Below are positions 38,797-61,118 of a DNA stretch of 64,000 nt, piece after piece (the stretch's first letter is position 1; every line of letters starts with the position of its first letter). Both the position numbers and the translations under genes were made by a program. The DNA lies in assembly GCA_976226885.1 (NCBI GenBank), contig OZ320318.1, positions 83,142,001 through 83,206,000 of the forward strand, in the 5' to 3' direction. Under the pieces are notes generated by a model, which made no database searches, was not told where the DNA came from, and saw nothing but the letters and a program-made list of their open reading frames with translations. The stretch comes from Iphione sp. A-MEVVRFRX5. Lineage: Eukaryota.

Positions 38797-38869
38797 ACCT
38801 AGATAGCTCAATTGGGAGAGCGTCAGACTGAAGTTCTGAAGGTTCACGGTTCGAACCCGTGTCTAGGTA
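38797..38869 (+). tRNA. tRNA-Phe(GAA) gene inside the Polinton
   Basis: 73-nt cloverleaf with all stems paired: ACCTAGA/TCTAGGT, GCTC/GAGC, TCAGA/TCTGA (loop CT-GAA-GT), CACGG/CCGTG (loop TTCGAAC). A and B boxes intact; T4 run 7 nt downstream. Confidence 0.9.
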
Positions 38870-39037
38870 TATTCATTTTATTGGAAGTAAATTTGTTTCT
38901 AGCTATTGTGTAATATCGTTTCTCCTATGTCCAGACTATAAAAGTCATACAATTGTGTCAGATTTAGCACATTCGTTTCACAGAGGTTGGAGAGAAAAGC
39001 AGTTTTTTCTTCATCTTCACGATTTTATTCATTTACA

Positions 39038-39580
39038 ATGTCTGAGGAGAGAGATTATTCCGCTGTCGATGGATCTATTCAAGCTGATTCATGTATTGAG
39101 TCCGATTCCGGGTGTATTGAGACTGATTCCGGGTGTATTGAGACTGATTCCGGGTTTGTACCGAGCGGTAACAGACCTTTTGCTTGTTCGTTGGAAAGGA
39201 ACACAGCAACCATTCGACCATTGTATGTTAATCCGAAATCACGTTGCAATGTACCAGCATTTCCCAAGTTCAAAGATAAAGAGGTTCGCCGTCAGACGTT
39301 CGCAGGATGGAGCGGTTTGATTGACATAGAAGAACTGGTTCAGAGTGGTTTCTTCTATATAGGAGTAGGAACTGTACAATGCTTTCATTGCGGACTTTGT
39401 CTTCATTCCTGGGAGTCTTCGGATACTCCACACATTGAACATTTGAAGTTTGCACCAGAATGTGCTTTTAATTCTTCATTATCTAAACCGACGCGTCAAA
39501 GAGAATTCTTTGTTACTGTGCTACGTGATATAATCAAAGTTGCTAAGAGTGTTAAAGAACTAAAGGATTCTTTTGTTTGA
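39038..39580 (+). CDS. BIR-domain inhibitor of apoptosis-like protein (single BIR, no RING), ~180 aa
   Basis: RRQTFAGW...LVQSGFFYIGVGTVQCFHCGLCLHSWESSDTPHIEHLKFAPEC carries the BIR CxxC-H-C zinc ligands. ATG at 39038 preferred over the upstream TTG. Confidence 0.9.
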   Translation: MSEERDYSAVDGSIQADSCIESDSGCIETDSGCIETDSGFVPSGNRPFACSLERNTATIRPLYVNPKSRCNVPAFPKFKDKEVRRQTFAGWSGLIDIEELVQSGFFYIGVGTVQCFHCGLCLHSWESSDTPHIEHLKFAPECAFNSSLSKPTRQREFFVTVLRDIIKVAKSVKELKDSFV

Positions 39581-39805
39581 GATGCAAAAAAAAAAAATGT
39601 TTATGTCAAACGAAATATTTTTCAATGTTTATGATGAAATAAAATGCAATAATTGAAAAAAGTGTTGTCTTTTTTATTTAAAATATATCTTGTTTAATTG
39701 AAAAAGAATGATCTTAATAGTTTGAATAATGACGAATCTTAACTAAAATATATTGAATAATGACGAATCTTAACTAATATTGTTGTTCAGTTCTCAAATA
39801 GATAA

Positions 39806-39947
39806 AAGATGGCGCCTTCTTTGAATGAATCATTAACGAAAAAAGTTAGATGGCGCACCTATTTCTGAACCAATGTTAACCAGCTTTTAAGATAATAGAT
39901 GGCGCCTATTTCTGTCTCTTTGTTAACCTGTATTAATAGAGGGCGCC
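39806..39947 (+). promoter_or_regulatory. Cluster of four YY1-like AGATGGCG motifs upstream of ORF 40134
   Basis: AAGATGGCGCC (39806), AGATGGCGC (39848), AGATGGCGCC (39897), AGAGGGCGCC (39938). A likely 5'-UTR intron follows at 40005-40111 (gtaagt...ttttttcag). Confidence 0.55.
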
Positions 39948-40133
39948 TTGAATTTGTCAGCTGTCGTTCCATCACTAGTGACTTATCATCGGATCGAGAA
40001 AGTGGTAAGTTGTATTCATAATTCATTTCTCTTTTTTTTTTTTTTTTTTTTTTGCAATTGTGAATATTTTTTTAAAGTTTAATTTTAATAGTTTTTTGTC
40101 CCTTTTTTCAGTTTTTCCATCTATTGGTTCATC

Positions 40134-40802
40134 ATGGAGCTTCTTCAAACTCTTCGAGTTGGAAAGAACTATAAGCTTACTGCTTACGATCCCTTCATTG
40201 AAAGCGAAGAAAGGACTGAACCAACTATCTTTCTTTCACACATAGAAAATCGTTTTAAGCGGATTCCCTTTACATTGGATGACTTTTTACGAGAAGAGGG
40301 GAGAAATGATTTAGTTGTTGTAATTTCACCAGACCAATACATTGAGCAAGAACTCAAGGAACTTGATGACAGACCGCTTGAAATTATGAGTCTTTTTCTG
40401 TATAGCATGAGAAAAATGCGCAAGGCTATGTTTCATCAAAAGTTGAGCTTATTCCATCTTTCTGCTCTCTCTGTGGTGGGACAGATGTGGATGGTTGAAA
40501 ATTCAGAAGAATCCGATTCAGAAAGCGAAGATGCTGCATTTGATTGGAGTGTAATTCATCCATGGCATACTGAGTTTACGAAAATGTCAAAAGTAATTCA
40601 GAATCTAAAAAAACTCCCCATTCCAAAACATCTTATATCAAAAATTAAAGAAGATGTGTGTGTGAATGAATCTGGTCGATTTGTTTATGGAATCATCGAC
40701 CGAAGTGTTCATATGGAGTGGAATATTTACGTAGAGCAGGCTATGATGGATCTCTTTTCATCTCCAGATCCTAAAAAAGTTCTTCGGGAAATAAAAAGGT
40801 GA
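40134..40802 (+). CDS. Hypothetical protein with BC-box- and Cul5-box-like motifs; may splice (intron 40799-40916) to end at 40971
   Basis: 222-aa ORF with SLFHLSALSV and LKKLPIPKHL. Donor ag|gtgatt and acceptor ttacag| are phase-compatible and would add DDGTYDLFAIESNGKNH*. Confidence 0.7.
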   Translation: MELLQTLRVGKNYKLTAYDPFIESEERTEPTIFLSHIENRFKRIPFTLDDFLREEGRNDLVVVISPDQYIEQELKELDDRPLEIMSLFLYSMRKMRKAMFHQKLSLFHLSALSVVGQMWMVENSEESDSESEDAAFDWSVIHPWHTEFTKMSKVIQNLKKLPIPKHLISKIKEDVCVNESGRFVYGIIDRSVHMEWNIYVEQAMMDLFSSPDPKKVLREIKR

Positions 40803-41598
40803 TTCTACTTTGAATTTATTTTACAATGTAATTGAAAAAAAATTAAACATTTATAATCTTTCATCTGTGTTTGAAAAGTGTTAATATGTTTTAACACCAA
40901 ATCAATTCTATTACAGGGATGATGGAACCTATGATTTATTCGCCATCGAATCTAACGGAAAAAATCACTGAGGGAAAAAATTGCTTCATCACCACACTCA
41001 TGTTTCAGGTAATTTTCATTCCCAGTTCGAAATTTAAAATTCTTTTTTTTCTCAAATTTTTTCCATCAAATTTTTTTTCTGTATCTTTTTTCGCTAGTTT
41101 AAAAAATGATATTCATGAAGACAAATTCTTTTTTTTTCAGAATGAATGATGGAAATGGTGCTTCCTGATTTCTGGTGCTCTCATTCATCACCTGATTTTC
41201 TCAATCTCTACTGATGGACGTTTAACGTTTTAAGAAAGAATATATATTTCATATAATTTCATATAATTTTTTCAATAAAAGCGAAGAATTATAAGAAAAC
41301 AGTCTTTTTTTTTATTTGTAAAATTCTAAACGTCACTGTTCTCAATAAAGCTATCAAATCAGTTCAAGAGTAATCTCTGATTATTAAAATCAGGTTGACA
41401 GGTCAGGTTCAATCACGAAAAGGTGATTCACCCACCTATTTTCTTTCCAATGAAAATGGAGTCAGGTGTAATTCGTTTAAGGACCTGTTTCACTGAATAG
41501 TGAAATCATGCCAGATATCGGGTTAGAGTCCCCCTTAAAAGTTTTCGATTGGTCTCTTTTTCCCGCGTAAAGATAGTGAAAAGCTCTACCCCTAGTAC

Positions 41599-41607
41599 TA
41601 TATAAAG
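41599..41607 (+). promoter_or_regulatory. TATA box of the PC4-like gene
   Basis: TATATAAAG about 90 bp upstream of ATG 41694. Confidence 0.6.
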
Positions 41608-41693
41608 TTGCTTCTGACTTTCCGTCATCATTGTTCAGTCCAGCTTTCCCATCACAGCATCAGTTTTCCAGCACTGATTTCACGAATTTCAAC

Positions 41694-42766
41694 ATGGAGA
41701 AGATTTCACCACAAATCTATATCGAGGTTGCTGAACCTTTCTTGAATCTTGAACGAAGAAAGGAAACTGGCATCAGACAATTGGAAATTCATCTTGGTCT
41801 CTTTCATATTGCGAAAGAGAAGCAGTCTCAAATTTTCAAGGGGAAAGTTATCAAGGTGGATAATTCGCAAAAGCATTGGAGCATTGAACGGAAACAATTT
41901 CATAACAAATACTATATCTGTTTCACCAGGCTTGATGATGACGGCGAACGTGTAAAGTGAGTAAGAAATTGTTGTGTCTGTTTTTTCCACAGGTCAGGAA
42001 TGAGTGCGCTAGTAAATTTCCTCTTTCATAGTGAATTCAATATTATTTTTTAAATTTGTTGGTTTTGTTTTTTAGTTATGATTCATTCAACCTGCTGGTC
42101 AGTGAGTTCGAGTCCATCTGTGAAATTCTCCATAAGAGGAAAGTGAATACCACCCCAGATTCATCCTCATCACCCACGAAGAGAAAGTCTGTGGCGACTT
42201 CACCGATGAAGAGAAGAAAGACATTACAAAACCTCTCTGCCAAACGGTTTTCATATCAATTGGTAACTTGTCTTACCGGAACAGTGCGTAATGTGTGTGA
42301 TGTGTATCTTGAAGAAGAGACTTGTATAAAAGAGGCTCAAGCTAGTGTTCAGGACGGTGAAATTCCAGAATACATTTCACTTCCATCTGTTGAACTAACA
42401 TTGAATCAGTTTGTACAAAGATGTTATGCTTATCTTTTATTGCTGGAATATAAAAAAAGAATAAAAGAGTTTTGTGAAGGTTGTCTGTTTAACGAAGACG
42501 CCCAAAATCACATTGAAGGTTGTATCTTTTCTGGAAGAGAGCCTGATGCAGACCAGTTGCATGCTGCACACATTAGAATTAGTGCACTGAGACTCATGGA
42601 AGCGTCTAAGTATATGTTAGATTACTACCATTGCTCTGATCCTAAGATCGACCTTGAAATAGATACATTGCTCTGTGAAACTGTTTTGAATGAAGCAAAA
42701 GATCATGAGAAGGATTACATTGTTGTGGAACATGAAAAGGAATATGAAGAATTATCAAGGCTTTAG
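41694..42766 (+). CDS. Spliced ~317-aa protein (exons 41694-41956, 42076-42766) with a PC4/Whirly-like ssDNA-binding-type segment and a C-terminal CxxC..H..C motif
   Basis: Donor aa|gtgagt and acceptor ttttttag|t are both phase 2 and join two ORFs in frame. WSIERKQFHNKYYICFTRLDDDGERVNYDSFNLLVSEFESI resembles the PC4 core; CEGCLFNEDAQNHIEGC lies downstream. Confidence 0.65.
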
Positions 42767-43875
42767 AGACGAAAAAACGTTTATTCAAAAGTCTTCTGTG
42801 TGCGCTGATTAGAAGAAAGTTTTCCTATGTCTAGAATCATTACACGTCAAAGTGTGCACGTTCAATGACAAGAAAAAGTTTAACATGCGTCTTGCTTTCA
42901 TGTTCAATGAGTAAGATCATTAGTCATCTATCTATCTATCTAAATGAACTAGAGTAGTTTTTCTTCCTTATTTCTTGAATCATATGTGCTGATTTGTTCT
43001 TACTTGTTTGTTTCCTTTTACAAATAATCATCTGTATTTTAACAGTACATACTGATTGTTTAGACTTGCTTGAAAAAAAATCTTAGTTTTGATTTCTCTT
43101 CAATAAAAAAACCTATGAAAAAAAATGTTATTTCTTTTTTTCTGATAAGTCTACAAATGTCCTAAGAAACAAAAAAATGTTGAGAACACAATGAAATAAC
43201 AAAAGAAAAAAAATTTCAAAAAGAAAAAAATGTTTCAAACTGAAAAAACTACCTCTATCTGAAACTAATGTGGAAAAGAGCGAGCTGTTGACCAGTCTTC
43301 TATTCAGCATCGTTGTCGACATCGTCACTTGAGCACAAACATCATTTGTTCTGGAAAAAAAAATATTTTCTAAGTCAACTGTCCTTTTATTATTTCAGTC
43401 AATTTTTTTTTGGAATAAGGTTGTGTAACTACTTATTCAAGAATTTTTAATAACTGAGTAAATCAAATTATATTTAGTTTCAAAGTAGATAAATTAACGT
43501 CTGTTTTTTTCTTAACATGTTAGTTGAAAGCTGAAAAAAATTATCACCTGAATTATCTTTCGCTTCTTGTTTTTTTTCGTGCTTGAAAAAATAAAGAACA
43601 TCTTCAAGGGCCTGGCTCTCCATCCTTCGTTACACACGTCAGGGATAGCTGCAAATCTGGCTGTCTCTCCATCCTTCGTTACACACGTCAGGGATAGCTG
43701 CAAATAAATCTGGTCCGCAGAGTTCTCACTCAAACTGGACACCCAAAAAAATTTTTCCTATTAGTAATTCTTCTTTCTTAATAAGAGATTAGTAATTCTT
43801 TTTTTTTCCAAAAAATTTGTTATATATTTCTTTCTTAACAAGAGTCTGAATTTTTATCTCCAAAAAAAAAATCAA

Positions 43876-46800
43876 TCAGTTAATGAAAAAAACAATTACC
43901 TGCAATTTGCGGAATCGTTTAGGTGTCGGTGGTGGCGCCATTGCTGTGTCAGCTGAAGCATCTGATGAGTGACTTGTCTTCGACATGCTTGCTAAGCGTC
44001 TTGAGCGTCTTGGAGTAGAAGGGGGCGTGGCACGACTTGAAATGCTCACATCTGAATCACTGTCAAACCCCGTTGCTCGTTGGGACTTGACAGACAAGCG
44101 TCTTGAGCGTCTTGGAGTAGAAGGGGGTGTGGTTCGTTGTGAAATGCTCACATCTGAATCACTGTCAAACCCCGTTGCTCGTTGGGACTTGACAGACAAG
44201 CGTCTTGAGCGTCTTGGAGTAGAAGGGGGTGTGGTTCGTTGTGAAATGCTCACATCTGAATCACTGTCAAACCCCGTTGCTCGTTGGGTCTTGACAGACA
44301 AGCGGCTTGAGCGTCTTGGAGTAGAAGGGGGTGTGGTTCGTTGTGAAATGTTCACATCTGAATCAGTCTCAAACCCCGTTGCATGTTGGGTCTTGTCAGA
44401 CAAGCGGCTTGAGCGTCTTGGAGTAGAAGGGGGTGTGGTTCGTTGTGAAATGTTCACATCTGGATCAGACTCAATCCCTGTTTGCCGTATTTCTGAAGAG
44501 CATGCTAACTGACTCATGTCTTTGTTACTAGTTTTTTCTGTTGTTTGTTTTGAAGTTTTCAAGTACTTTTCTACCACTGTCGAGTCAAGTCTGACAACTG
44601 GGTTTATTGTTTTGACGAATTTTTCCATTAATTTTCCATCTAGAAGTTTCAGAGGAAGTTTGACAATGATTTCTGGTTGCTTGCTGAGTGATGCAAAAGG
44701 GATGTTGCTTGAAGATGGAACCACTTCTGTTGACGAGAGATTGGGAGTAGGTTTGAAACACACACTTCTTGGAATTGCTTCAACTGTGTTTGAACCTGTG
44801 ACAAATGGTTTCTTTTGTGTCAGGGAAGCCTCATCTCTCGGTGGGGTGGTAGTGGAGGTGGTAGATGAAACTGTTTCCACATCTGTTGTTGATTCAATGC
44901 TACTAGAACTGGAACAAACACTTCCTGGAATTGGAACATTTGAGTTAGTGCTTGTGGAAAACGGTTTTCTAGTTGTCAGACAAGATGGGGTGGCTGAAGA
45001 AGCTNNNNNNNNNNNNNNNNNNNNNNNNNNNNNNNNNNNNNNNNNNNNNNNNNNNNNNNNNNNNNNNNNNNNNNNNNNNNNNNNNNNNNNNNNNNNNNNN
45101 NNNNNNNNNNNNNNNNNNNNNNNNNNNNNNNNCTCTGTCGGGGTGGTGGTGGTGGAGGTGGTGATAGGTGTTGAAGAGTCATCTTTTGTTGGGGTGATGG
45201 GGATAGTTGAGTCACGTGCAAAAGGATTAGTAGGCGACAGTGTTGAAGAAGAAGAAGACACATCTCTCGTTGGGCTGCTCGATAAACCAGCTACTGCATA
45301 TGCTGATGAGACATGAGCAAAAGGATTAGTAGGCGACAGCGTTGAAGAAGTCACATCTCTCGTCGGGGTAGTCGTTAAACCCACTAATGCATATGTTGAT
45401 GAGTCATGGCTAAAAGGATTAGTAGGTGACAGCATTGAAGAAACCACACCTCTCGTTGGGCTGACCGATAAAACAGCTACTGCATATGCTGACGAGTCAT
45501 GAACAAAAGGATTAGTAGGCGACAGCGTTGAAGAATTCACATCTATCGACGGACTGCTTGTTAAAACTGCTTCTCCATCTGCTGACGAGTCATGGGTTGG
45601 AGAGGAAACAGTGCAGAGACTAGCTGCTACTGCATCTGCTGTCTGTTCATTGCCAGATGGGTTGGGACAAACATCATTGTTAATGAATGAAGCAAAAGGG
45701 TTATTGCTGGAGAACACTGGCTCATTCTGTTGTCTTTCTGGTTGAACAGACTTCAGGCTGCTGATGTTTACAGGTGAAAATGATCTTTCCAATGCTGATG
45801 AATGTGTAGGTATATGAGTGAGTGAACATTCTGTTGGAGAATGACTGGGAGACGTGTTCTGCATGTTCTTTGGGAGAACATCCTTCAGACTTCTACTGGA
45901 AAAACATGATAGGTGAGAAGAAGAAGAGTGTGATGCTGTTTGAGATTGTTGTGGAGGAGTAGGTGATCGTGGTGATGGTGGTGGAGGTGGTGGACTCGTT
46001 CGCTCTGGTGATGGAGGTGGTGTTCGAGGTGATGGAGGGGGTGGTGGTGGACTCGTTCGCTCTGGTGGTGGTGGTGAACGGAGTGATAGTGGTGGATTCG
46101 TTCGCTCTGCTGGTGCTGGTGAAGAACGTGCTGGACCAGGTGAACGCTGTGGTGGTGGGATAGATTGCTCTGCTGGTGCTGGTGAAGAACGTGCTGGACC
46201 AGGTGAACGCTGCGGGAAAGGTGAACGTGGTGGTGGACTCGTTCGCTCTGGTGGAGGTGGTGATCGTGGTGATGGAGGGGGAGGTGGTGGACTCGTTCGC
46301 TCTGGTGAAGAACGTGCTGGTCCAGGTGAACGCTGTGGGAAAGGTGATCGTGGTGGTGGTGAAGAACGTGCTGGAGCAGGTGAACGCTGTGGGAAAGGTG
46401 ATCGTGGTGGTGGTGAAGAACGTGCTGGACCAGGTGAACGCTGTGGGAAAGGTGATCGTGGTGGTGGTGAAGAACGTGCTGGAGCAGGTGAACGCTGTGG
46501 GAAAGGTGATCGTGGTGGTGGTGAACGCTGTGGGAAAGGTGATCGTGGTGGCGGTGAAGAACGTGCTGGGTCAGGTGAACTTGGTGGTGTTGGTGAATGA
46601 AGGTGTACTGGATATGGAGATGTGGGGACTGGAAGCGTTGAACGTGGTCGTGCTGTCGATGATGATGATGAGGTGCCTGGAAGTGGTGAACGTGGACGAG
46701 GTGTCAATGATGATGGGGATCCTGGAAGTGTTGAACTTGGACGTGGAGACAATGATGAGGGTCCTAGAAGCGATGGTCGTGAACGTGGTGTCAATGATGA

Positions 46801-47272: not shown

Positions 47273-47590
47273 CTTTGAAAAATAGAATAGGAAAAAACAA
47301 AAATATATATATGCCTATTTCCAATTTTATTCTTTTTTAAAAAAAAAACCCACAGAAAATTACTAACACTCCCCTTGAATTTAGTTTTAGCAACTTTTTA
47401 CTTTTAGGGTTAGCTTCATTCAAGAAAAAAAAAATTCAGAGCCCACCTTGTCAACCTAGGCTGACAAGGATGCAACAAAAGTAGAATTTTTTTTTACCAT
47501 TTGTTTTCTTAATTAACGATTGAAAGAATTTTAGAGGGATTTTTTTTTTTCTCTAAAAAAAATCAAGGGAGTAAAAATGAACACACTAAC

Positions 47591-52156: not shown

Positions 52157-53269
52157 TTATATACCTTCCTGTATGCGTTTCAGTTCCTCCTTACTGACCC
52201 AGGAATCATACTTACTGGGCCAACCGAGCCAGTGAACAATGAATCCGTCCTTTCCATTAAGCTTTTTTTTTCTGATAACTTTTTCTACTTTATATTGAGT
52301 ATCTTGGTTCACTTCCACCGGGATCATTTCTTCTGTATAGAATTTTCCATCTATTTCTTCATTGTCCCAAGACTTAAGTGAATATTGGGGAATACCTTGT
52401 TGCATTTTCCTGTCTGTAACCACAAACAATTCATGAGTCCAGTTTTCGTCATAAGCCCTTGTGAAGGTTTGTTTGAATTTAGATAACCTCACAACATCAC
52501 CCTTTTCAAACTTGAAAGGAAAAGTTTTGGGGATTTTCTTGTCTTTGGTAGTATCAAATTGAACGTTCCACAATTTGACTTTTTCACTCTCACTGGCTTG
52601 AAGGGGAGTCATTTTGATAGAACGATGAAAAGAATTATTGTATGAATCTGTGAAATGAGAAAGATTTTCCAACCACTTGTGACTTTGTAAGAAGTACATC
52701 TCTTTGGTGATCTTGGATTTTATTGTTTTTATGAAACGTTCAGCATAATTTGCTTTCACTTCGTTCCTCGTTACCACGTGCTTTATATTTTCTTTGTTCA
52801 GGTACTTCCTCACCCATTGATTATTGAATTCACTTCCTCCGTCAGTTCGTAGCACTTTACAAACTTGCTCTTGAAAGACAGATTTCAGTGCGCTCAATGT
52901 TTCTTTTCCCGAGAGAGTTTTGAGGGGACGAGTCCAAGCATACCTGGGAAAAACATCTATGACCACTAAGAAATAACTCATTCCATCGTTTTCTTTAGAC
53001 CATGTGACCATATTAGCAGTATCTGCATCGAATTGAAAGAATTTATCCGAAACCACCACCCTTGGTCGTTTCACAGAACGAGAAGGTTTTGAAGGGGCAA
53101 ATAACGTATATGTCTCCTGTGCTTTCAACCATTCTCGTATTTTCTTGAGAGAGATATTCTTGCCATCTTTCTTAGCTCTCGTATAAAGTGCTGTCACACC
53201 AGAAAAAGCTTCGGGTTCATTGGGGTCATAATAAATCTTGTTTAAGTACTCTTCCATCCATCGTGCCAT
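52157..53269 (-). CDS. Retroviral-type DDE integrase with C-terminal chromodomain
   Basis: FQFDADT (D), LRTDGGSEF (D), YAERFIKTIK (E); chromodomain YKVEKVI...FIVHWLGWPSKYDSWV. Consistent with the 6-bp TSD. Confidence 0.96.
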   Translation of the reverse strand: MARWMEEYLNKIYYDPNEPEAFSGVTALYTRAKKDGKNISLKKIREWLKAQETYTLFAPSKPSRSVKRPRVVVSDKFFQFDADTANMVTWSKENDGMSYFLVVIDVFPRYAWTRPLKTLSGKETLSALKSVFQEQVCKVLRTDGGSEFNNQWVRKYLNKENIKHVVTRNEVKANYAERFIKTIKSKITKEMYFLQSHKWLENLSHFTDSYNNSFHRSIKMTPLQASESEKVKLWNVQFDTTKDKKIPKTFPFKFEKGDVVRLSKFKQTFTRAYDENWTHELFVVTDRKMQQGIPQYSLKSWDNEEIDGKFYTEEMIPVEVNQDTQYKVEKVIRKKKLNGKDGFIVHWLGWPSKYDSWVSKEELKRIQEGI

Positions 53270-53628
53270 GCTAACTGCCTCTTCTTTTTTCTTAAGGGTT
53301 TACCTGGTGGTGGAGGAACGATTGCTAAAGGAGTTGACTGTTTCCTCTGTTTACTTTGTTTTTTCATTGACGAGGAGACTGGTTGTGTGCTCGATTGTGG
53401 TGGAGATGATGGCGGCGGTGACGGCGGCGGCGACGGCGGTGGTGGGGGCTGAGGCGACGATGGGCGTGACGGTGGAAATGGCATCAAAGGAAGCCTAGAT
53501 ACCCAACCACCACCACCCTGCAGTTCCTTTTGTGGGTGAGTATCCGAATGTTCGTCTTCACTCCTCTTTGTGGGTTGAGAAAATAAAGCTTGGTAACGCT
53601 CAAAGGGTATACACACCACTTTTCTCAT
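53242..53628 (-). CDS. Small Polinton hypothetical protein, Pro-rich
   Basis: 128-aa ORF overlapping both neighbours. MRKVVCIPFERY start and terminal Trp resemble the small ORFs usually found between ATPase and integrase. Confidence 0.7.
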   Translation of the reverse strand: MRKVVCIPFERYQALFSQPTKRSEDEHSDTHPQKELQGGGGWVSRLPLMPFPPSRPSSPQPPPPPSPPPSPPPSSPPQSSTQPVSSSMKKQSKQRKQSTPLAIVPPPPGKPLRKKKRQLAWHDGWKST

Positions 53629-53960
53629 TCTCTCATCAGTTTAAATAGATCTGGTTTGATTGAAAGAAGAATGCGATATAGCTGAGTACGTTGATGTGCA
53701 ATCAGTTTAGCTTTCTTTTTCAATGAGGAAGTGGGATCACTAAGATTCTTGATGAGTCTTATATTCTTGTCAACGACTCTTCTGACTGGTTGAGGGATAG
53801 GGAGATTGTTTAAATTAAAAGCAATCTCGCTCAAGACTAATGCCTGGTCTGGGGTTACAGTGTACAAGAGTGCTTCTGCTTGGTTCTTGTTTGGAGTGTT
53901 CAGAAGAAGAGTGAGAAAGTCTTTCTGGTTGTTGATCCGTGGACTCTTCATTTGTACCAA
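53625..53960 (-). CDS. Small Polinton hypothetical protein
   Basis: 111-aa ORF (FLTLLL...AEALL...DQALVLSEIAFN) directly downstream of the ATPase, with overlapping start/stop. Confidence 0.75.
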   Translation of the reverse strand: MVQMKSPRINNQKDFLTLLLNTPNKNQAEALLYTVTPDQALVLSEIAFNLNNLPIPQPVRRVVDKNIRLIKNLSDPTSSLKKKAKLIAHQRTQLYRILLSIKPDLFKLMRE

Positions 53961-54568
53961 ACTAGAACCTCGTCAGGGAAAATGTGAGAGGTTAACTTGA
54001 CTTCAGTGTGATTGCGTGGATGGAGGTCGACCACTAAATAACCGAATGGTTCGGAAGTGACGTCTTTATATGCTTCCTTTATGCTCGGCATTCCGACTTG
54101 TTGTGCCAGACGTGTTATCTGTTGAATATCCCTTGGATTTTTAAACAGCACTAAGTATTGAGAATTGAGAGCAATTGTCCTGGCACATTTTCCTTGACAA
54201 TATAAATTCTGATTCATATAAATAATAGTAATATCCCTATGGTGAGATCCTCTAGTAAACAAATGCTGAATTTCCGAATCGTTCACTACAATATCCATCA
54301 AGTCGTCTAGTATCAAAAGAATTCTTCCACCTTCTTTCAAATCCTCCAAATTGATTCCCTCGCGGAATTCAACATCTTTAACATCTTGAAATCCAGTTTG
54401 CCAAGCACCATAACAATATACGATTTTTTTGAAAGGTTTTTCAAACAGTTGTTTTCTATATCGGATGAGTTTCTTCACGAAATATGTCTTACCAGAAGAG
54501 GTGGCTCCAGAAATGGATATGGTGCTTGGTGTAGCGAAGCTGAACGATGGTATGTCTAGTTCAGTCAT
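53948..54568 (-). CDS. A32/FtsK-like DNA packaging ATPase
   Basis: Walker A GATSSGKT, Walker B LLILDD, FTRGSHHRDITIIYMNQNLY, FKNPRD. TATAAAA about 40 bp upstream of ATG 54568. Confidence 0.95.
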   Translation of the reverse strand: MTELDIPSFSFATPSTISISGATSSGKTYFVKKLIRYRKQLFEKPFKKIVYCYGAWQTGFQDVKDVEFREGINLEDLKEGGRILLILDDLMDIVVNDSEIQHLFTRGSHHRDITIIYMNQNLYCQGKCARTIALNSQYLVLFKNPRDIQQITRLAQQVGMPSIKEAYKDVTSEPFGYLVVDLHPRNHTEVKLTSHIFPDEVLVWYK

Positions 54569-54661
54569 TGTGAGAACACAATATGTCAAGACAAAATACA
54601 AACTTATGGTTTTATATTGCAGTGCAATGAAATAATAACTGAAACAAATTAGTTTTTTTTT

Positions 54662-57600
54662 TCATTTATTCAACTCCATGCGTACTCTCACCTCTTCCCA
54701 TAACTCCCCGAGTTTATTCTTTCCTTTGAATTCACATGGTCGAGAAATTTTCACATTTCCAACATCCATACCTACACCCCAAAACCTGTCTAGACTAGCA
54801 TATACAATCTTTTTACAATGAGAGAGTTCTTTCCTCACTTCAGGGAAAGTTCTAGCTATATACAACATGAGATCCCTCATGATTTTGAGATTAACCTCTT
54901 CGAGATTCTCACTAGGTTTTATGAAAGAAAGTAATGACTTCATTTCTTTTGGATCAGAAGAAGAATGAATTAATCGAGCCACTTCGGTTGCACGGTGAAA
55001 CACGGCGAGGTTATAATAAAACATGTGAAACAAAGATTGAAAACCAGCAAGTTGCCATCTGTAAAAGGGATTCAAGACTTCCCAGGGTTTAGCAATTATA
55101 AAATAATCATCAACATTCCATGGGGATAATGTGATCTGAAGAGGTGAGGTGTTGATTCCATCATCATGAACGATTCTCTTTACATAGAAGTAAGAAAATC
55201 CCACTCGTTCCTGCCTATATGTAAAAATTGTTCCGTCTCGAGCTCGGAAACCAGAATTGGTACCTGATTTAGGAATCTGTGTTTCCAGAACTGAAGAATA
55301 CAACGCTAAGGGTTCTGTCACCTTAGATTTTGAAATTCCTTTACAACTGAATTTTGACACACCCTTGTTATCTAAAACATAAGTCTTACTGGTCAGTGCT
55401 ATGATGGAATCGCCTCTCGCCTCCTCTTTCATGATCCCTGGAACTCTTCTGTCAAATGAATGATGTCTGTCACAACACTGACGCATGAACCAAATCGGAG
55501 AGAGCTTATCATCACATCTATCCCTGATCTCACTGACATACTCCATCTTCTTATCAACAAAGATGTTGTCTTCAAAGTTTTCGTATGCAAAAGCAATATA
55601 AGCACTGTCGGTATCCATAGTTACGTATTGAAAATGATTTCTAGGAATAAGTCTGTCTATACAATCATAATAGAAAGATAACATAGTTAATTTAGCATAT
55701 TGTAAAATGGTGAAACCGATATAAATAGGCATATCGAGAACAATACGGGGTTTAACAGATTCTACCTCAAAAAGACCATTTAATTCATTTACTTTTCTGA
55801 AACGGGGAGAATTAATTGCATTGATCGTTTCAGTGGGATCTGAAAAATATTTTACATTCATTTGCTTTTCTTTTTGCATGATAACTCCCCCATAAGCAGA
55901 ATTCCCTATGAGCTTCATGGTGTCAGCAATCACTGCACTATCAGGATCAGAGTCACCCTGTCTTCTTGCACTTGTTACATCTTCTGTAAATTTCTTGAAA
56001 CAATCTTTGGGAACGAATTCAATCATCTGGTAAATTTTTGTAACCAGCAAACCATGTTCCATATACCATTTTAGAAGAGGAGAAGCTATGAGGATCTTTT
56101 TAGCAGACAAAGCACTGACCAGAAGCTCTCTCGGATTTCGTGATAGATTATGTTCTTCAACATGTTTCTGCATGTGGGGACCAAAATGATTGAATTCGAC
56201 ACTTGCCTTTCCAAATAAAGGACACATTTCTGAGAAATATTCCTTTGGTGGGAGTTCCCTCTCCATTCCTTCAGGCCAAACATTGGGAACTGAAATATCC
56301 ACTTCCAGAGCACCAAACAGACTTCCATCAGAAACCCCCTTTAAAATATCCTTAGTCGTGACCTTTCCAGGATGCTTGCGAGTGAACTCAGGATAAAATA
56401 AATTCACCCAGTCTTGAAGCTCTGTTGAATTTTGAATCATTTCCCTGAAGTAGCACTCGTTCATACTAATTACTTCATAACCATTTTTTTCAAAAAAATG
56501 CTTTCTCTTTTTTGTTCGTTCCTCATTTTTCTTTCGGATATTTTCTTTCATTTTTCCCTTCATACAAATATGACCATGAAAATAACACCCATCGAACTCG
56601 AAAATCTGTTTGGAACTCTGTGAATGACTATAACCATCGACCCTATAAGGACCCACTCTGACTTCACCCTCAGCTCTGTTCTGAAAATGAGAGATATGAA
56701 TCCCACGCTTTTCAGATTCCCACTCCAACCAGATATACATCAATTGGTAAACAGAATGACGAACAGGTTTGAAACCAGTCTCTTCATGCCTTCTGACAAA
56801 ATTTCCAGTCGGCATTGCATTTCCAATTGCAGATAAATAGAGACTGTTTGCATCAAAGCCAATAATTGTTTGACATTTGTGTGGACCAGATCTGATGAAA
56901 GTTTCATTAGCAATATGCTTTCGAGTAAATACTATTGCTGGACCACCTACTAAATTCCTCTTATAAGTTTGATATAAATCTTCCTCAGAATTATTGAATA
57001 AAGGGAAATGTGTGTTACTCTCTGAAGCTGACTGGAAAAGCATTCTACGTGCTATCCCTGGAGCAGAGACTGAAATCTTGAATATATCTATTTCTCTTTG
57101 AAAATAGAAATCTTGTAAACGAACAACAGCTGTAACAAAAGGTCCAACATCCAGATTATTATAATAGGCTAAAAAATCCCTCAGCGTTTCCATCCCTTCC
57201 CTTTCCCATATACACAATAATTGTTCGTATTCCTCTCGGGAAATATTTGAGTTCCTAAAAGATGAATAAAAAGCATCATGTGGAGGAAGAGAGCGATCAT
57301 TTAACTTTTCTGGGCAGTCCAAATATTCATAACAAAAGAAGGATTTCTGCTCTGGTACTCCATATGCCTTCAGAAATTTCGAATAGGATACCCCTGGACT
57401 CAAATACTGACATATGTCAAGAAATTTGAATTGATCATTGGATATACAGATATAAGAATTCTCTCGTTTAATGACAAAGGTTTCCTTTCCCACCAGATCC
57501 AAATGGTTTAAGAGTTGCTTTCTGAGAAGATTTAGGTCATATCTCGCCGAATTGAATCCTAAAACTGGAAGACAAGAAATGTAAGCCAGTAGACGCTTTT

Positions 57601-59470
57601 CCAAACTTCCAATCAATTTCAACATTTCTAAACTCTCATGTTCTTTCCTTTCAGAGTCCACGTCATCACCAGCCGTGTCTCCATCATCGATCACACCACC
57701 AATCCCCACGTCACATTCATGAATTGGATAACAGTCAACCCAAGAGGAATCTTCTTCTGTCATCATCACCTCCTCCACCACCTCCTCCTCCACCTGCACT
57801 TCACGTTCGATTCCCGCATGCTTAAGTTCTTCCAAAAGATCCTTTCTCATTTCCTTTAAAGCACTCAATGCAAAAGCCCATTTCTCTTTACCCTTCTTTA
57901 GAGTCTCCTCTTGAATTCTCTTTAGATAATCCACCATTTCCTCAACAAGAGCAGACATGTCCTCATTGATAAAGCAACGTGGAGTTGAGAAATTTTCCAC
58001 ATTACTACAGACAGAAACTGAAATCGTCTCGTGTTTGTTAATCCAGTGTAATTTAGAACAATTTCCAGGATCTGTGGCACGAAGCATTGCCTCGCAATCG
58101 AACACTGCAAAATCACGAAAAAGTCGATCCTCTCGTGGAACATGAATCCCAACACTTTCCAATTCTTCAAAAATTGTGGAAGGATTACTATAGAAACCCC
58201 CTTTGTAGTGATACGTTGTTTTAAGAGGACAGGTTCTCATGTGTCTGAGAAAATGGTGCTTCTTTTTTAAACAGAAACCACACATTGAACACTCAAATTT
58301 CTGAGCATACCTTGGAAAATCTGAAACATACGAGAGATGACCATGGTACACATTTAAGTACATTGTGTCAGTGAAACAAGTGAATGGTTTATGTTTGAGT
58401 TTCACTGAATCATTAACAGTCATTTCATAAATGTATATACTCGTCTCGAAACATCTCTCGAACTCTCCTACAAGTTTCATATCAAGACCAGCAAACTCAA
58501 AAGGATCAGAGGGAATAGATAGTTTGAGTTTTCTGTTGCAATACTGATTCCATTGTTCATAATATACAGTAACTGCAGCCTCGATATCTGCTTGTTGATT
58601 GTGAACGGCCAAACACCTAAATGCACAAAGCGAGTCTGTGATCTGTGTGGAATCATCGTGACGGTCAAGTGAAATGAGAAATGGTTTCCTTTTTAAAAAT
58701 TCAGGCAAGAAACCGTATCCTAAAGTAAAAGACGTTTTCGAAATGAAATAAGTCACATTTGTAATCATGACTGCTTTCCATTTGGTGTCTGGTCGATTCA
58801 CAGTAAAATAACCCTCTGGATCAAAAGCACTAAGCCTCTCCAAGATTCGGGGTATGTCTGACCTTCTTGAAATAATGACAGGATCTGAAAATACTGTACT
58901 GTTCCGATACGGAACAAAGTACCTGTACTCTCCACTCTCCACATGTCTTAAGATAACTCCAAACCCGAGATTCAGTTTGATTCGTGAGTCTTCGAGATGG
59001 AAAATCTCGTTTAGTTGGCTAGTAAATTCATTCACACCATCTGAAAGATTATTGGTAGGGAAATTAAAAGTACTCGAAACCTGACCCGACCTGTGATTTG
59101 CAAGAATATGTCCACGATTAGCTTCATACACTCTTCTCAGGGGTTCATCAACAACCGAACCATGTTCATCAAGCCATGGTGCAGCATTGTGCTGCCATGG
59201 TTCTTCCTGAAGTGTATCACCACTTCCATGCTGAATGCCATTGTGCATATACAAATCTTTTTTGGAATTAAAGACCTCAGAACATTTCCTACACCTATAA
59301 GATTTTCTTTTGCTGTGATATGACATGTGATGGTTTAATTGCTGAACAGTTCTAAAGCGCCTATTACATTGCATACATGTTAGGTTTTTCTTCTGCTGAC
59401 ACTTGGGAATATGGTTCTTTGCATTCTTCTCACGAACGAAGGATCTGGAGCATATGGGACATATGTGTCT
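54662..59470 (-). CDS. Protein-primed family B DNA polymerase (pPolB), main exon: zinc fingers, terminal-protein region, vOTU-like protease, exonuclease, polymerase with Vsr-like insertion, C-terminal NADAR-like domain
   Basis: ExoI FDCE, ExoII FNSARYD, ExoIII YNNLD; Pol DANSLY, KLIGNSAYG, MDTDS. Frame stays open upstream of ATG 59374 to acceptor ttttttctag| at 59470. AATAAA overlaps the stop codon. Confidence 0.97.
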   Translation of the reverse strand, partial: RHICPICSRSFVREKNAKNHIPKCQQKKNLTCMQCNRRFRTVQQLNHHMSYHSKRKSYRCRKCSEVFNSKKDLYMHNGIQHGSGDTLQEEPWQHNAAPWLDEHGSVVDEPLRRVYEANRGHILANHRSGQVSSTFNFPTNNLSDGVNEFTSQLNEIFHLEDSRIKLNLGFGVILRHVESGEYRYFVPYRNSTVFSDPVIISRRSDIPRILERLSAFDPEGYFTVNRPDTKWKAVMITNVTYFISKTSFTLGYGFLPEFLKRKPFLISLDRHDDSTQITDSLCAFRCLAVHNQQADIEAAVTVYYEQWNQYCNRKLKLSIPSDPFEFAGLDMKLVGEFERCFETSIYIYEMTVNDSVKLKHKPFTCFTDTMYLNVYHGHLSYVSDFPRYAQKFECSMCGFCLKKKHHFLRHMRTCPLKTTYHYKGGFYSNPSTIFEELESVGIHVPREDRLFRDFAVFDCEAMLRATDPGNCSKLHWINKHETISVSVCSNVENFSTPRCFINEDMSALVEEMVDYLKRIQEETLKKGKEKWAFALSALKEMRKDLLEELKHAGIEREVQVEEEVVEEVMMTEEDSSWVDCYPIHECDVGIGGVIDDGDTAGDDVDSERKEHESLEMLKLIGSLEKRLLAYISCLPVLGFNSARYDLNLLRKQLLNHLDLVGKETFVIKRENSYICISNDQFKFLDICQYLSPGVSYSKFLKAYGVPEQKSFFCYEYLDCPEKLNDRSLPPHDAFYSSFRNSNISREEYEQLLCIWEREGMETLRDFLAYYNNLDVGPFVTAVVRLQDFYFQREIDIFKISVSAPGIARRMLFQSASESNTHFPLFNNSEEDLYQTYKRNLVGGPAIVFTRKHIANETFIRSGPHKCQTIIGFDANSLYLSAIGNAMPTGNFVRRHEETGFKPVRHSVYQLMYIWLEWESEKRGIHISHFQNRAEGEVRVGPYRVDGYSHSQSSKQIFEFDGCYFHGHICMKGKMKENIRKKNEERTKKRKHFFEKNGYEVISMNECYFREMIQNSTELQDWVNLFYPEFTRKHPGKVTTKDILKGVSDGSLFGALEVDISVPNVWPEGMERELPPKEYFSEMCPLFGKASVEFNHFGPHMQKHVEEHNLSRNPRELLVSALSAKKILIASPLLKWYMEHGLLVTKIYQMIEFVPKDCFKKFTEDVTSARRQGDSDPDSAVIADTMKLIGNSAYGGVIMQKEKQMNVKYFSDPTETINAINSPRFRKVNELNGLFEVESVKPRIVLDMPIYIGFTILQYAKLTMLSFYYDCIDRLIPRNHFQYVTMDTDSAYIAFAYENFEDNIFVDKKMEYVSEIRDRCDDKLSPIWFMRQCCDRHHSFDRRVPGIMKEEARGDSIIALTSKTYVLDNKGVSKFSCKGISKSKVTEPLALYSSVLETQIPKSGTNSGFRARDGTIFTYRQERVGFSYFYVKRIVHDDGINTSPLQITLSPWNVDDYFIIAKPWEVLNPFYRWQLAGFQSLFHMFYYNLAVFHRATEVARLIHSSSDPKEMKSLLSFIKPSENLEEVNLKIMRDLMLYIARTFPEVRKELSHCKKIVYASLDRFWGVGMDVGNVKISRPCEFKGKNKLGELWEEVRVRMELNK

Positions 59471-59572
59471 CTAGAAAAAATGTAATAAATCGTTATAAAA
59501 AAACAAATTCATTGAAAAAGCGAAATTGACAAAAAAAATCTTTTTTTAAAACCACAAATTGTTAGCTCTTAC

Positions 59573-59626
59573 CTTTTTTTCTTCACTAGTTCCTGAACCA
59601 GCAGATGATGACACAGTGGGAGAGTT
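59573..59626 (-). CDS. pPolB putative exon 3
   Basis: tttacacag|NSPTVSSSAGSGTSEEKK|gtaaga, phase 0-0. Confidence 0.6.
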
Positions 59627-59760
59627 CTGTGTAAACAGAGACAAGGGCGCAGGTAGGATTTACTTTTGGAATAATGTCGTAAAAAAAACAAGAATCTATT
59701 CATATATTTAAAAAAAGTAAAAAAACATGGAAGCGAAACATAGATTTATTTCTCTCTTAC

Positions 59761-59856
59761 CACAGGTGAAGATGAAGAAGGCCGAGCAGATGTGGAAGGA
59801 CTATTAGGAAGGAACTCGCTGCTAGAGTCAACAAAAAATTCATCAAGCACTGCCCT
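59761..59856 (-). CDS. pPolB putative exon 2
   Basis: ttttcttttcag|RAVLDEFFVDSSSEFLPNSPSTSARPSSSSPV|gtaaga, phase 0-0. Confidence 0.68.
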
Positions 59857-59947
59857 CTGAAAAGAAAAGGATAAAACAAAAGGATTGTCTTCAATGTGAA
59901 ATAAATGAAAGATTAAAAAAACTATAAAAAACAAAATTAAACTTTAC

Positions 59948-60109
59948 CTCTTCACTTGTTAAATGCTGAATACGCTCCAATTTTCTCTTCTTTTCAAGAA
60001 CGAGTGGATTATCTTCAATGTTGTTGTCATTCGCCCATTGCATGAGCTCATGAACGTTTGTGAAATCTCTGAGTCCATTCCTGATGAAATCGATGTTAGC
60101 TTGTGCCAT
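59948..60109 (-). CDS. pPolB putative exon 1
   Basis: ATG...MAQANIDFIRNG...LTSEE|gtaaag, 54 codons, phase 0. Confidence 0.68.
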
Positions 60110-60148
60110 TCTTGAATACTGAAGGGATTCGGTTAAAATCAGCCTCCC

Positions 60149-60156
60149 TATTTATA
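60149..60156 (-). promoter_or_regulatory. TATA box for the pPolB transcript
   Basis: TATAAATA on the minus strand 40 bp upstream of ATG 60109. Confidence 0.65.
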
Positions 60157-61046
60157 GAGGATGGGATATCAGTTATCAGATATGAAATGTGATTTCACAA
60201 CCAAGTGAAAGGACTGGAAAATAGATTCGAATACTTTTTTCCCAATATCTAATAAATGTATCCTAATTGAAAGTATTGTTTTTTCATTCATTCCCGTCAT
60301 AATAGAAAACTATGATGAAATCATTTTTATGGAATATCAAAACACATACGCCATCTATATTTAAGTTTCAGCAAAAGCGAAAATATTTTTCCTGCATATG
60401 ACACTAGGTGGAGTTGAAGGGACATGATTGCAACAAGATTCGAGTCTCCATCTATCCGCTAGATGGCTACATAAAAATCATTGCTCTAGTTCCATTGCTT
60501 ACCGGTAGGATTGAAATAGACGCTAACAAACAACGATTCGTCTTTTTTTAGCAAAATATAAATGATTGACAATGTTTTCCATCTCTACATACAGTTAAAA
60601 AGTTGAAATACTCCATAATTAAATGAAAAAATGAATAGGGAATTGAATACAAAACCGAAACAAGCATATTAATATGGAATACAGTTATTTTTTCAAACAT
60701 CTCCTAAAAAACACCATTTACAGATACATTTAAATTAAATATAGTCTTATCTGAAATGAAATCCTGGTATGTTTGTTTTGGGACAGTCTTCCCTTGATCA
60801 TTGGAGGACTGGCTCATTTTCGGGTCAGCACCTCCCTGAATCATTGGAGGACTACCTGAATAGTTTTAGGAAGGATTCCTCGTGCATAGTTGCCCCAAGG
60901 TCCGCTCGTGTCCCGCCTGGCACGAGCGGCAATTTTTGAACAGGGACGCTCTAATTAGCGTCCCGATAATCAAATAGAAAAAAAAATCCCCATAGTCCAC
61001 GTTCAATAATTGAACCACCATACGTTACTCCAATGTAAAAAAGGTC

Positions 61047-61118
61047 TTCCCAGACTCGGATTTGAACCGAGGACATACGGATATTCCGTCCGACGCTCTC
61101 CCACTGAGCTACCTGGGA
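61047..61118 (-). tRNA. tRNA-Phe(GAA)-like Pol III gene with a non-canonical anticodon loop
   Basis: 72 nt: TCCCAGG/TCTGGGA, GCTC/GAGC, TCGGA/TCCGT (one mismatch, loop CG-GAA-TA), CTCGG/CCGAG (loop TTCAAAT). A and B boxes intact; T6 terminator 4 nt downstream. Confidence 0.78.

What the first reader, a model, noticed from the sequence alone, without database searches (positions are those of the whole stretch)
38797..61118. Inward-facing pair of tRNA-Phe(GAA)-like genes bracketing the Polinton, both with altered anticodon loops
Seen: 38797-38869 (+, 528 bp from the left end) and 61047-61118 (-, 387 bp from the right end) lie outside the TIRs and differ in sequence, yet both keep paired stems, A/B boxes, T-run terminators and GAA. 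Loops are CT-GAA-GT and CG-GAA-TA versus the usual eukaryotic CT-GAA-GA; stems are diverged with compensatory pairing. Established: SAMD9/9L antiviral nucleases cleave tRNA-Phe in the anticodon loop; phages carry variant tRNAs that offset anticodon nucleases; adenoviruses make Pol III VA RNAs; tDNA/TFIIIC sites can act as chromatin barriers. Inference: these RNAs may be nuclease-resistant replacements or decoys against a tRNA-Phe-cleaving defence, and/or boundary elements shielding the provirus from silencing. I do not recall tRNA genes being described as a Polinton module; a literature search is needed.
Basis: partly seen in the sequence, partly recalled or inferred. Interest (0 to 1): 0.85.

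Follow-up and report, generated by a model that had tools for sequence, protein, structure and literature searches.

The report
Paired tRNA-Phe genes inside a Polinton
An apparently intact virus-like transposon (a Polinton) in what is most likely a marine invertebrate genome carries two diverged phenylalanine-tRNA genes, one just inside each end; both have kept the tRNA shape, which suggests the element needs its own copy or variant of this one tRNA.

Summary
ARAGORN and Rfam both call tRNA-Phe(GAA) at 38797-38869 (+, 68 bits) and 61047-61118 (-, 53 bits). The element runs 38269-61505: a perfect 74-nt terminal inverted repeat and a 6-bp target duplication (GTGGTT). Both genes therefore lie inside it, 528 and 387 nt from the termini, pointing inward. 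Apart from the repeat, the tRNAs are the only similar sequence between the two ends (76%). Of 21 stem pairs, 20 are kept, through four double compensatory changes and a covarying 15:48 tertiary pair (P about 1e-4). Both keep the eukaryotic PheRS identity set, a B-box-like segment and a T-run. The left gene looks standard. The right one has G33, U37 and a 27-43 mismatch, and can refold its anticodon arm.

Best reading: these are paralogues left from a once longer terminal repeat, kept as Pol III RNAs that back up Phe decoding for a Phe-rich, TTC-leaning gene set. The SAMD9-type evasion idea stays open, but the altered positions are not the published direct determinants. The boundary idea is untested. 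tRNA genes are known in Polinton-like viruses and virophages, so this is a new variant, not a new kind.

The parts
38263..38268 (.). left copy of the 6-bp target-site duplication (GTGGTT)
   Evidence: read directly; same hexamer at 61506-61511
38269..61505 (.). whole Polinton/Maverick-type element (23,237 nt as written, including a 128-N gap)
   Evidence: TIR plus TSD; hallmark genes
38269..38342 (+). left terminal inverted repeat, 74 nt, 100% identical to the right one
   Evidence: identity ends abruptly after 74 nt
38343..38603 (+). left subterminal array of 46-bp repeats, each with an ATTGG box
38797..38869 (+). left tRNA-Phe(GAA) gene, standard-looking (U33, G37; U38); points inward
   Evidence: B-box-like match
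38876..38879 (+). T4 run, likely Pol III terminator of the left tRNA gene
39038..39580 (+). first protein gene inside the left end: BIR (IAP-type) domain protein
   Evidence: Pfam PF00653, 57 bits
43876..47226 (-). repetitive P/S/T-rich ORF that contains the assembly gap 45005-45132
   Evidence: continuity across the gap not demonstrable
49645..50127 (-). adenain-like cysteine protease candidate
   Evidence: Pfam PF00770, 17.3 bits, below cut-off
50108..51466 (-). double jelly-roll major capsid protein
   Evidence: model pLDDT 78.7, pTM 0.80; Foldseek top hits are Sputnik and mavirus capsid proteins, E about 1e-15
52157..53269 (-). rve integrase with C-terminal chromodomain
   Evidence: Pfam PF00665 34.2 bits, PF00385 32 bits
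53948..54601 (-). A32/FtsK-type packaging ATPase candidate
   Evidence: weak Pfam and PHROG matches
54662..59374 (-). protein-primed-type family B DNA polymerase with N-terminal C2H2 fingers and C-terminal NADAR domain
   Evidence: 199 relatives, many carrying PF03175
60978..61035 (-). 58-nt unit ending in T9, interior to the right tRNA; 76% like 61139-61196
   Evidence: family D16
61037..61042 (-). T6 run, likely Pol III terminator of the right tRNA gene
61047..61118 (-). right tRNA-Phe(GAA)-type gene with non-standard anticodon arm (G33, U37, unpaired 27-43); points inward
   Evidence: B-box-like match
61139..61441 (-). right subterminal array: one 58-nt unit plus 54-bp repeats, each with an ATTGG box when read inward
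61432..61505 (-). right terminal inverted repeat
61506..61511 (.). right copy of the target-site duplication (GTGGTT)

Best explanation
Shown: the two loci are genuine tRNA-Phe(GAA)-class genes of the eukaryotic Pol III type. They belong to the element itself, an apparently intact Polinton of an animal host, and lie just interior to its terminal repeats. Inferred: they are paralogues left over from a formerly longer terminal inverted repeat. Only the outer 74 nt are still kept identical. The inner part has diverged beyond recognition except for the tRNA, which selection has kept folded at the RNA level in both copies. This ancestry, rather than a need for symmetry, explains the mirror-image, inward-facing layout. 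Inferred function: the left gene makes a chargeable, decoding-competent tRNA-Phe that supplements or insures Phe decoding for a gene set that is Phe-rich and leans toward UUC. The right gene makes a tRNA-shaped RNA that keeps the synthetase identity marks, but its anticodon arm is non-standard and can refold. It probably does not decode normally: it is either a specialised tRNA-like RNA or a copy that is losing its decoding role.
For: Two independent callers identify the genes. The element borders are fixed by the TIR and TSD. Between the two ends only the TIR (100%) and the tRNA (76%) are alike. 20 of 21 stem pairs are kept through 4 double compensatory changes, P = 1.2e-4. The tertiary 15:48 pair covaries (A:U against G:C), and positions 8, 14, 18, 19, 21, 26, 46, 53-56, 58 and 61 are identical in both (read). 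Compensatory changes at 1-72 and 4-69 lie outside the internal promoter boxes, so they argue for selection on the RNA and not only on a DNA site. The eukaryotic Phe identity set (A73, G20, G34, A35, A36; PMC9976931) is present in both. Neither gene encodes CCA, and a T-run follows each within 4-6 nt. Non-repeat ORFs of the element hold 6.35% Phe against 4.6% expected from base composition, and TTC makes up 43% of Phe codons against 29% C-ending codons in the other two-codon NNY families (Fisher p = 4.9e-6). The PolB and capsid protein lie in the upper part of their homologues' Phe range. tRNA genes are a known cargo of related viruses (PMC12220804).
Against: There is no expression or charging evidence. 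Host coding sequences and host tRNA-Phe genes are not available, so neither the codon argument nor 'variant versus host' can be calibrated. Element and flank GC differ little (38.6% against 40.8%), so classical codon compensation is weak. Every eukaryote reads both Phe codons with this anticodon, so a simple supply role is not compelling on its own. The pairwise compensatory pattern could also arise from two separate captures of already different tRNA-Phe genes. Conservation in related elements was not examined (referred step).
Confidence: 0.5

Rival explanations
1. Counter-defence: one or both RNAs offset a host anticodon nuclease that depletes tRNA-Phe (SAMD9/9L type), as a replacement that is not recognised or as a decoy. 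This would be the eukaryotic parallel of phage tRNAs with altered anticodon loops.
For: tRNA-Phe is the specific target of human SAMD9 (PMC10246899). SAMD9/9L homologues are widespread in vertebrate and invertebrate animals but absent from arthropods and nematodes (PMC13245274), and the named PolB relatives come from molluscs and lancelets. A small element spends two genes on this one tRNA. U37 in the right copy excludes m1G37, a prerequisite for Gm34 by human FTSJ1-WDR6 (PMC7403668), and Gm34 is required for SAMD9 cleavage. The right copy's arm can also refold into a 5-bp stem with a 3-nt loop, outside the 7-8 nt loop rule. The same FTSJ1 paper reports that loss of these methylations lowers UUU but not UUC decoding, which fits the element's TTC lean. 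Phage precedent: PMC10264068 and PMC11555353.
Against: Both RNAs keep C32, G34 and a stem, and the positions that differ (33, 37, 38) are not direct determinants in vitro. The left, decoding-competent copy keeps G37 and is predicted to be as sensitive as a host tRNA-Phe. The copy predicted to escape has G at 33 and U at 37, against the conserved model positions, so it is a poor replacement. The rules come from human enzymes, and the host and its nuclease are unknown.
Confidence: 0.2
2. Chromatin boundary: the two tDNAs act mainly as TFIIIC/Pol III-bound barrier or insulator sites that bracket the integrated element's Pol II genes.
For: There is one tDNA at each end, between the terminal repeat arrays and the first Pol II gene. 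The only two B-box-like matches in 64 kb are in these genes. tDNAs and TFIIIC sites are documented barriers (PMC2040200, PMC3395662).
Against: A DNA-level role needs only the promoter boxes, yet acceptor-stem and Levitt-pair covariation and the full PheRS identity set are kept. The symmetry is explained more simply by descent from a longer terminal repeat. No chromatin data are available.
Confidence: 0.15
3. Passengers without function: captured host tRNA-Phe genes, or one gene duplicated with the ends, that are drifting. The right copy is already a pseudogene.
For: The right copy has a lower score (52.8 bits), an opened 27-43 pair and unusual loop positions. With only two sequences, compensatory changes cannot be dated.
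Against: The flanks have diverged completely, while 20 of 21 pairs, all tertiary positions and all identity nucleotides survive 24% divergence. Space in a 23-kb capsid-packaged genome is limited.
Confidence: 0.12
4. Two insertions of a tRNA-derived SINE of the host.
For: None beyond the tRNA-like head.
Against: Similarity is confined to the 72-73 nt tRNA and 3 nt upstream. T-runs follow at once, with no body or tail. There is no other copy in about 40 kb of host flank and no further tRNA-like match at E up to 1.
Confidence: 0.03

Closest known systems
tRNA genes carried by Polinton-like viruses, virophages, giant viruses and phages
   Same: A virus-borne tRNA gene as small cargo. The usual explanations are codon supply or protection of the tRNA pool (PMC12220804; flags in PMC8502044 Fig. 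6).
   Different: Here the carrier is an integrase-bearing Polinton of an animal. There are two diverged paralogues of one specificity in mirror positions next to the terminal repeats, and one has a non-standard anticodon arm. The reported PLV cases in cryptophytes are His, Leu and Arg.
Phage tRNAs with anticodon-loop changes that avoid host anticodon nucleases (PMC10264068; PMC11555353)
   Same: A virus-encoded copy of a tRNA that a host defence is known to target, with loop positions that differ from the standard.
   Different: In phages the changes sit at known cleavage determinants. Here they do not match the published direct determinants of the SAMD9 tRNase, and the host nuclease is unknown.
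tDNA / TFIIIC chromatin barriers (fission yeast centromere 1, budding yeast ETC sites; PMC2040200, PMC3395662)
   Same: Pol III promoter elements placed at the edges of a chromatin domain.
   Different: Those are host loci shown to act as barriers. Here nothing is measured, and RNA-level conservation goes beyond what a barrier needs.
Pol III RNAs of animal DNA viruses (adenovirus VA RNAs; tRNA-like genes at one end of murid gammaherpesvirus 68). Named from my own knowledge; no sequence was fetched or typed.
   Same: Small Pol III genes with internal promoters near a genome end of a linear dsDNA virus. The gammaherpesvirus RNAs are tRNA-shaped but, as I recall, not charged.
   Different: No Rfam family other than tRNA matches either end at E up to 1. 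Terminators follow the tRNAs directly, so there are no co-transcribed hairpins. Both RNAs keep a full synthetase identity set.
Gene pairs duplicated in long terminal repeats of linear dsDNA viruses (own knowledge)
   Same: Mirror-image gene copies near both ends.
   Different: Here only 74 nt remain identical and the tRNA is the sole surviving island of similarity further in.

Membership tests
tRNA gene (Rfam RF00005), eukaryotic nuclear Pol III type | Cloverleaf scoring above the family's gathering score | tested here: met
   68.1 and 52.8 bits against 29; ARAGORN agrees
tRNA gene (Rfam RF00005), eukaryotic nuclear Pol III type | Conserved tertiary positions (8, 14, 18, 19, 21, 53-56, 58, 61; 15:48 pair) | tested here: met
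   All present in both; 15:48 covaries, A:U against G:C (sequences)
tRNA gene (Rfam RF00005), eukaryotic nuclear Pol III type | Internal B box, T-run terminator, no encoded CCA | tested here: met
   The only two B-box-pattern matches in the window are these (the pattern was a consensus recalled from memory, so treat it as a lead). T4 and T6 runs and no CCA
tRNA gene (Rfam RF00005), eukaryotic nuclear Pol III type | Standard 7-nt anticodon loop with the conserved U at 33 and a purine at 37 | tested here: inconclusive
   The left copy meets it. The right copy has G33 and U37, an unpaired 27-43, and an alternative arm fold 1.6 kcal/mol better than the cloverleaf
tRNA gene (Rfam RF00005), eukaryotic nuclear Pol III type | Transcribed, processed and aminoacylated | not testable with these tools
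   Needs RNA data from the host
tRNA-Phe identity (eukaryotic PheRS) | A73, G20, G34, A35, A36 | tested here: met
   All five in both copies, against the set in PMC9976931
Polinton / Maverick | Terminal inverted repeats and 6-bp target-site duplication | tested here: met
   74-nt perfect TIR; GTGGTT on both sides
Polinton / Maverick | Family B DNA polymerase of the protein-primed type | tested here: met
   1570-aa ORF. Pfam did not call the polymerase domain in it directly, but 199 relatives were found, many carrying PF03175, with 55-58% identity to the best
Polinton / Maverick | rve-family integrase | tested here: met
   PF00665, 34.2 bits against 32.6, plus chromodomain
Polinton / Maverick | Double jelly-roll major capsid protein | tested here: met
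   Model pTM 0.80; Sputnik, mavirus and PBCV-1 capsid proteins at E about 1e-15
Polinton / Maverick | Adenain-like protease and A32/FtsK packaging ATPase | tested here: inconclusive
   Both match only below Pfam cut-offs (17.3 and 17.4 bits). Weak terminase-like PHROG match
Nuclease-evading viral tRNA (phage paradigm) | Loop changes at positions known to govern cleavage by the host nuclease | tested here: not met
   Against the published SAMD9 rules both keep pyrimidine 32, purine 34 and a stem; the changed positions are not determinants. There is only an indirect route through position 37
Nuclease-evading viral tRNA (phage paradigm) | Host encodes a nuclease that targets this tRNA | not testable with these tools
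   Host not identified; only a family-level distribution from PMC13245274
tDNA chromatin barrier | Measured barrier or insulator activity, or TFIIIC occupancy | not testable with these tools
   Only the position and the promoter box are seen
tRNA-derived SINE | tRNA-like head plus body and tail; dispersed copies | tested here: not met
Adenovirus VA RNA or other curated viral Pol III RNA | Match to the Rfam family | tested here: not met
   No family but tRNA at either end at E up to 1, apart from chance-level rows

The most novel reading that the evidence does not exclude
An animal virus-like element carries its own tRNA-Phe variants as an answer to a SAMD9-type tRNA-Phe anticodon nuclease. One copy tops up the pool. 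The other keeps the synthetase and nuclease recognition marks but lacks the features needed for the wobble methylation that licenses cleavage. This would be the first eukaryotic counterpart of phage tRNA-based evasion, and it would date tRNA-Phe-targeted immunity back to invertebrates.
Probability: 0.15. Interest if true: 0.9.

Novelty: new variant of a known kind. Interest (0 to 1): 0.6.

Why it matters
Virus-borne tRNA genes are familiar in phages, giant viruses and Polinton-like viruses of protists. A mirror pair of diverged tRNA-Phe genes in an intact animal Polinton has not been described in the literature I could search. tRNA-Phe is the one tRNA known to be cut by an animal antiviral nuclease, so the pair offers a sequence-level handle on two questions: whether tRNA-targeted immunity and viral answers to it exist outside mammals, and what small Pol III genes do in the Polinton-adenovirus lineage. 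If the pair proves to be a conserved module, it also gives a marker for the inner ends of these elements.

Tried and rejected
- **SINE origin:** rejected.
- **VA-RNA-like or tRNA-plus-hairpin units:** rejected. Terminators follow at once and there is no Rfam match. The strongly folding hairpins at 60902-60965 lie beyond two T-runs.
- **Relic tRNAs in the subterminal arrays:** none found.
- **Host identification:** ten flank ORFs gave no Pfam family. Only the PolB search gave named animal relatives.
- **Exact look-up of further copies:** it would find nothing, because the window's own capsid and PolB proteins are not in the protein collection.
- **PLV tRNA tables:** the supplement search gave nothing usable.
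- **Wasted search:** one literature search was badly framed.
- **Classical codon compensation by GC difference:** weak, 38.6% against 40.8%.
- **Spliced gene models:** none made. The stretch 59375-60900 probably holds spliced genes that I left unmodelled.

Full report
**What is there**

ARAGORN finds exactly two tRNA genes in the 64-kb window, both tRNA-Phe(gaa): 38797-38869 on the plus strand and 61047-61118 on the minus strand. Rfam's tRNA model confirms both over their full length, at 68.1 and 52.8 bits against a gathering score of 29.

**Element borders**

- A 74-nt inverted repeat, 100% complementary, lies at 38269-38342 and 61432-61505.
- It is flanked on both sides by the hexamer GTGGTT (38263-38268 and 61506-61511).
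- The element is therefore 38269-61505. The tRNA genes lie inside it, 528 and 387 nt from the termini, both transcribed inward.
'Outside the TIRs' should be read as 'just interior to them'.

**The assembly gap**

The gap (45005-45132) lies in a repetitive proline/serine/threonine-rich ORF on the minus strand. On each side only one frame is open, and it is the same coordinate phase. Because the gap length is an estimate, continuity cannot be shown. The gap has no bearing on the tRNA loci. A second gap (61808-61957) lies in the host flank.

**What the element is**

| Gene | Evidence |
|---|---|
| BIR-domain protein | Pfam, |
| rve integrase with chromodomain | Pfam, |
| Adenain-like protease candidate | weak Pfam match, |
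| A32-type ATPase candidate | weak matches, |
| Family B polymerase, 1570 aa, with N-terminal C2H2 fingers and C-terminal NADAR domain | |
| Capsid protein, 452 aa | model (pLDDT 78.7, pTM 0.80) matches Sputnik, mavirus and PBCV-1 double jelly-roll capsid proteins at E about 1e-15 |

Together with the TIR and the 6-bp duplication, this makes it a Polinton/Maverick. In the five hallmark genes I counted no stops or frameshifts: each lies in one uninterrupted ORF. The identical repeats and the intact duplication indicate a recent insertion.

The polymerase has 199 relatives. The best are 55-58% identical, and many share the finger-polymerase-NADAR layout. The named relatives come from animals: Pinctada, Argopecten, Littorina and Branchiostoma. 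The host is therefore most likely a marine invertebrate. I could not identify it further. Nothing in the window looks human.

**Anatomy of the ends**

- Reading inward, each end has the 74-nt repeat, then an array of tandem units, then the tRNA gene with its T-run, then the first TATA-preceded protein gene.
- The units are 46 bp on the left and 54 bp plus two 58-nt units on the right. Each carries an ATTGG box in the same orientation.
- Between the two ends, the only similar segments are the repeat (100%) and the tRNA (76%, from 3 nt upstream to 2 nt short of the 3' end). Everything else is unalignable.

**The two tRNAs compared**

- They are identical at 54 of 73 positions.
- Ten substitutions fall in paired columns. 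Eight of them make four double compensatory changes (1-72, 4-69, 29-41, 50-64), one keeps a G-U pair, and one opens 27-43 in the right copy. That leaves 20 of 21 pairs intact.
- Random placement of ten substitutions gives a mean of 13.9 pairs kept and reaches 20 with P = 1.2e-4.
- The tertiary 15:48 pair covaries, and the other conserved tertiary positions are identical in both.
- Both copies carry the eukaryotic phenylalanine identity set A73, G20, G34, A35, A36 (PMC9976931).
- The only two matches in the window to a B-box pattern are in these genes.
- Neither gene encodes CCA. T4 and T6 runs follow after 6 and 4 nt.
- The left copy is standard apart from U at 38.
- The right copy has G at 33 and U at 37, where the Rfam consensus is strongly conserved and where position 37 is normally a purine (PMC7403668). 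Its arm can refold into a 5-bp stem with a 3-nt loop, 1.6 kcal/mol better than the cloverleaf.

**Not a SINE, and not another known RNA**

There is no further copy in about 40 kb of host flank. There is no body or tail, and no other Rfam family at either end at E up to 1.

**Best explanation**

The mirror layout is most simply the trace of a once longer terminal repeat that contained one tRNA-Phe gene. The outer 74 nt are still kept identical, the inner part has drifted, and the tRNA has been held in shape in both copies.

Compensatory changes in the acceptor stem and in the 15:48 pair lie outside the promoter boxes. Selection has therefore acted on the RNA, not only on a protein-binding DNA site.

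For function I favour support of Phe decoding:
- The non-repeat ORFs hold 6.35% Phe against 4.6% expected from composition.
- TTC makes up 43% of Phe codons against 29% C-ending codons in comparable families (p = 4.9e-6).
- The polymerase and capsid protein sit in the upper part of their homologues' Phe range.

This part is inference. I have no expression data and no host codon table.

- Human SAMD9 cuts tRNA-Phe between positions 31 and 32. It needs a 7-8 nt loop, a stem of at least 3 bp, a pyrimidine at 32 and a 2'-O-methylated purine at 34; the neighbours of 34 do not matter (PMC10246899).
- Both RNAs satisfy the sequence-level rules, so the altered positions do not by themselves predict resistance.
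- An indirect route exists for the right copy. Gm34 formation by human FTSJ1-WDR6 requires m1G37 (PMC7403668), and this copy has U37. However, the same copy looks unfit for decoding.
- SAMD9 homologues are widespread in invertebrates other than arthropods and nematodes (PMC13245274).
- Phage tRNAs with loop changes are a precedent (PMC10264068).

The model stays open at about one chance in five.

**The boundary model**

It fits the geometry and known tDNA barriers (PMC2040200, PMC3395662). It does not explain the RNA-level conservation, and it cannot be tested here.

**Novelty**

tRNA genes are known in Polinton-like viruses and virophages (PMC12220804) and are flagged in some midsize linear dsDNA viruses (PMC8502044). 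I found no report of a subterminal tRNA-Phe pair, or of Pol III genes, in animal Polintons. I rate it a new variant of a known kind.

Its yield would also be limited: the closest relatives are only 40-58% identical in protein, and most of their contigs are a few kb long.
- Early in my reasoning I began to recall a host-type tRNA-Phe sequence from memory.
- The B-box pattern was a promoter consensus recalled from memory and should be treated as a lead.
- The alignment tool printed a consensus line by itself.

Noticed in passing
window 39038-39580 (+): The first gene inside the left end encodes a BIR (inhibitor-of-apoptosis type) domain protein (Pfam 57 bits). It has a 21-bp x3 coding repeat at 39092-39155 and a TATA-like box about 100 nt upstream, only about 70 nt after the left tRNA gene.
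   Followed up: partly
window 54662-59374 (-): The polymerase ORF is a fusion: two C2H2 zinc fingers at the N-terminus, the family B polymerase, and a C-terminal NADAR domain (43.5 bits). Many relatives share the finger-polymerase-NADAR layout.
   Followed up: partly
window 43876-47226 (-): A large repetitive proline/serine/threonine-rich ORF (units of 102, 93, 54 and 45 bp, all multiples of three) contains the assembly gap. It has no Pfam family and its role is unknown.
   Followed up: partly
window 38269-38603 and 61139-61505: The terminal repeat carries an ATTGG box and the palindrome TGACGTCA (38332-38339). The subterminal arrays repeat the ATTGG box 5-6 times per end, always in the same orientation reading inward, with different unit lengths at the two ends (46 and 54 bp). 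These may be transcription-factor, replication or packaging sites.
   Followed up: partly
window 60902-60965 (-): Two GC-rich perfect hairpins lie downstream of the right tRNA gene, beyond two T-runs. The 147-nt stretch folds far better than shuffles (z = -4.4). It matches no Rfam family.
   Followed up: partly
window 60978-61035 and 61139-61196 (-): Two 58-nt units, 76% alike, each ending in a run of 9-10 T, flank the right tRNA gene. The tRNA gene thus sits inside the repeat array on this side, but beyond it on the left side.
   Followed up: no
window 61808-61957: A second assembly gap (150 N) lies in the host flank about 300 nt outside the right target duplication.
   Followed up: no
window 59375-60900: No ORF of 90 aa or more lies between the polymerase gene and the right tRNA. 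A TATA-like box near 60150 and short consecutive ORFs on the minus strand suggest one or more spliced genes. No splice model was made.
   Followed up: no
window 1-38262: The host flank is gene-poor, with microsatellites and short tandem repeats. None of ten ORFs of 112-286 aa has a Pfam family. A 286-aa ORF at 35274-36134 (-) in a GC-richer patch may be a host exon.
   Followed up: partly
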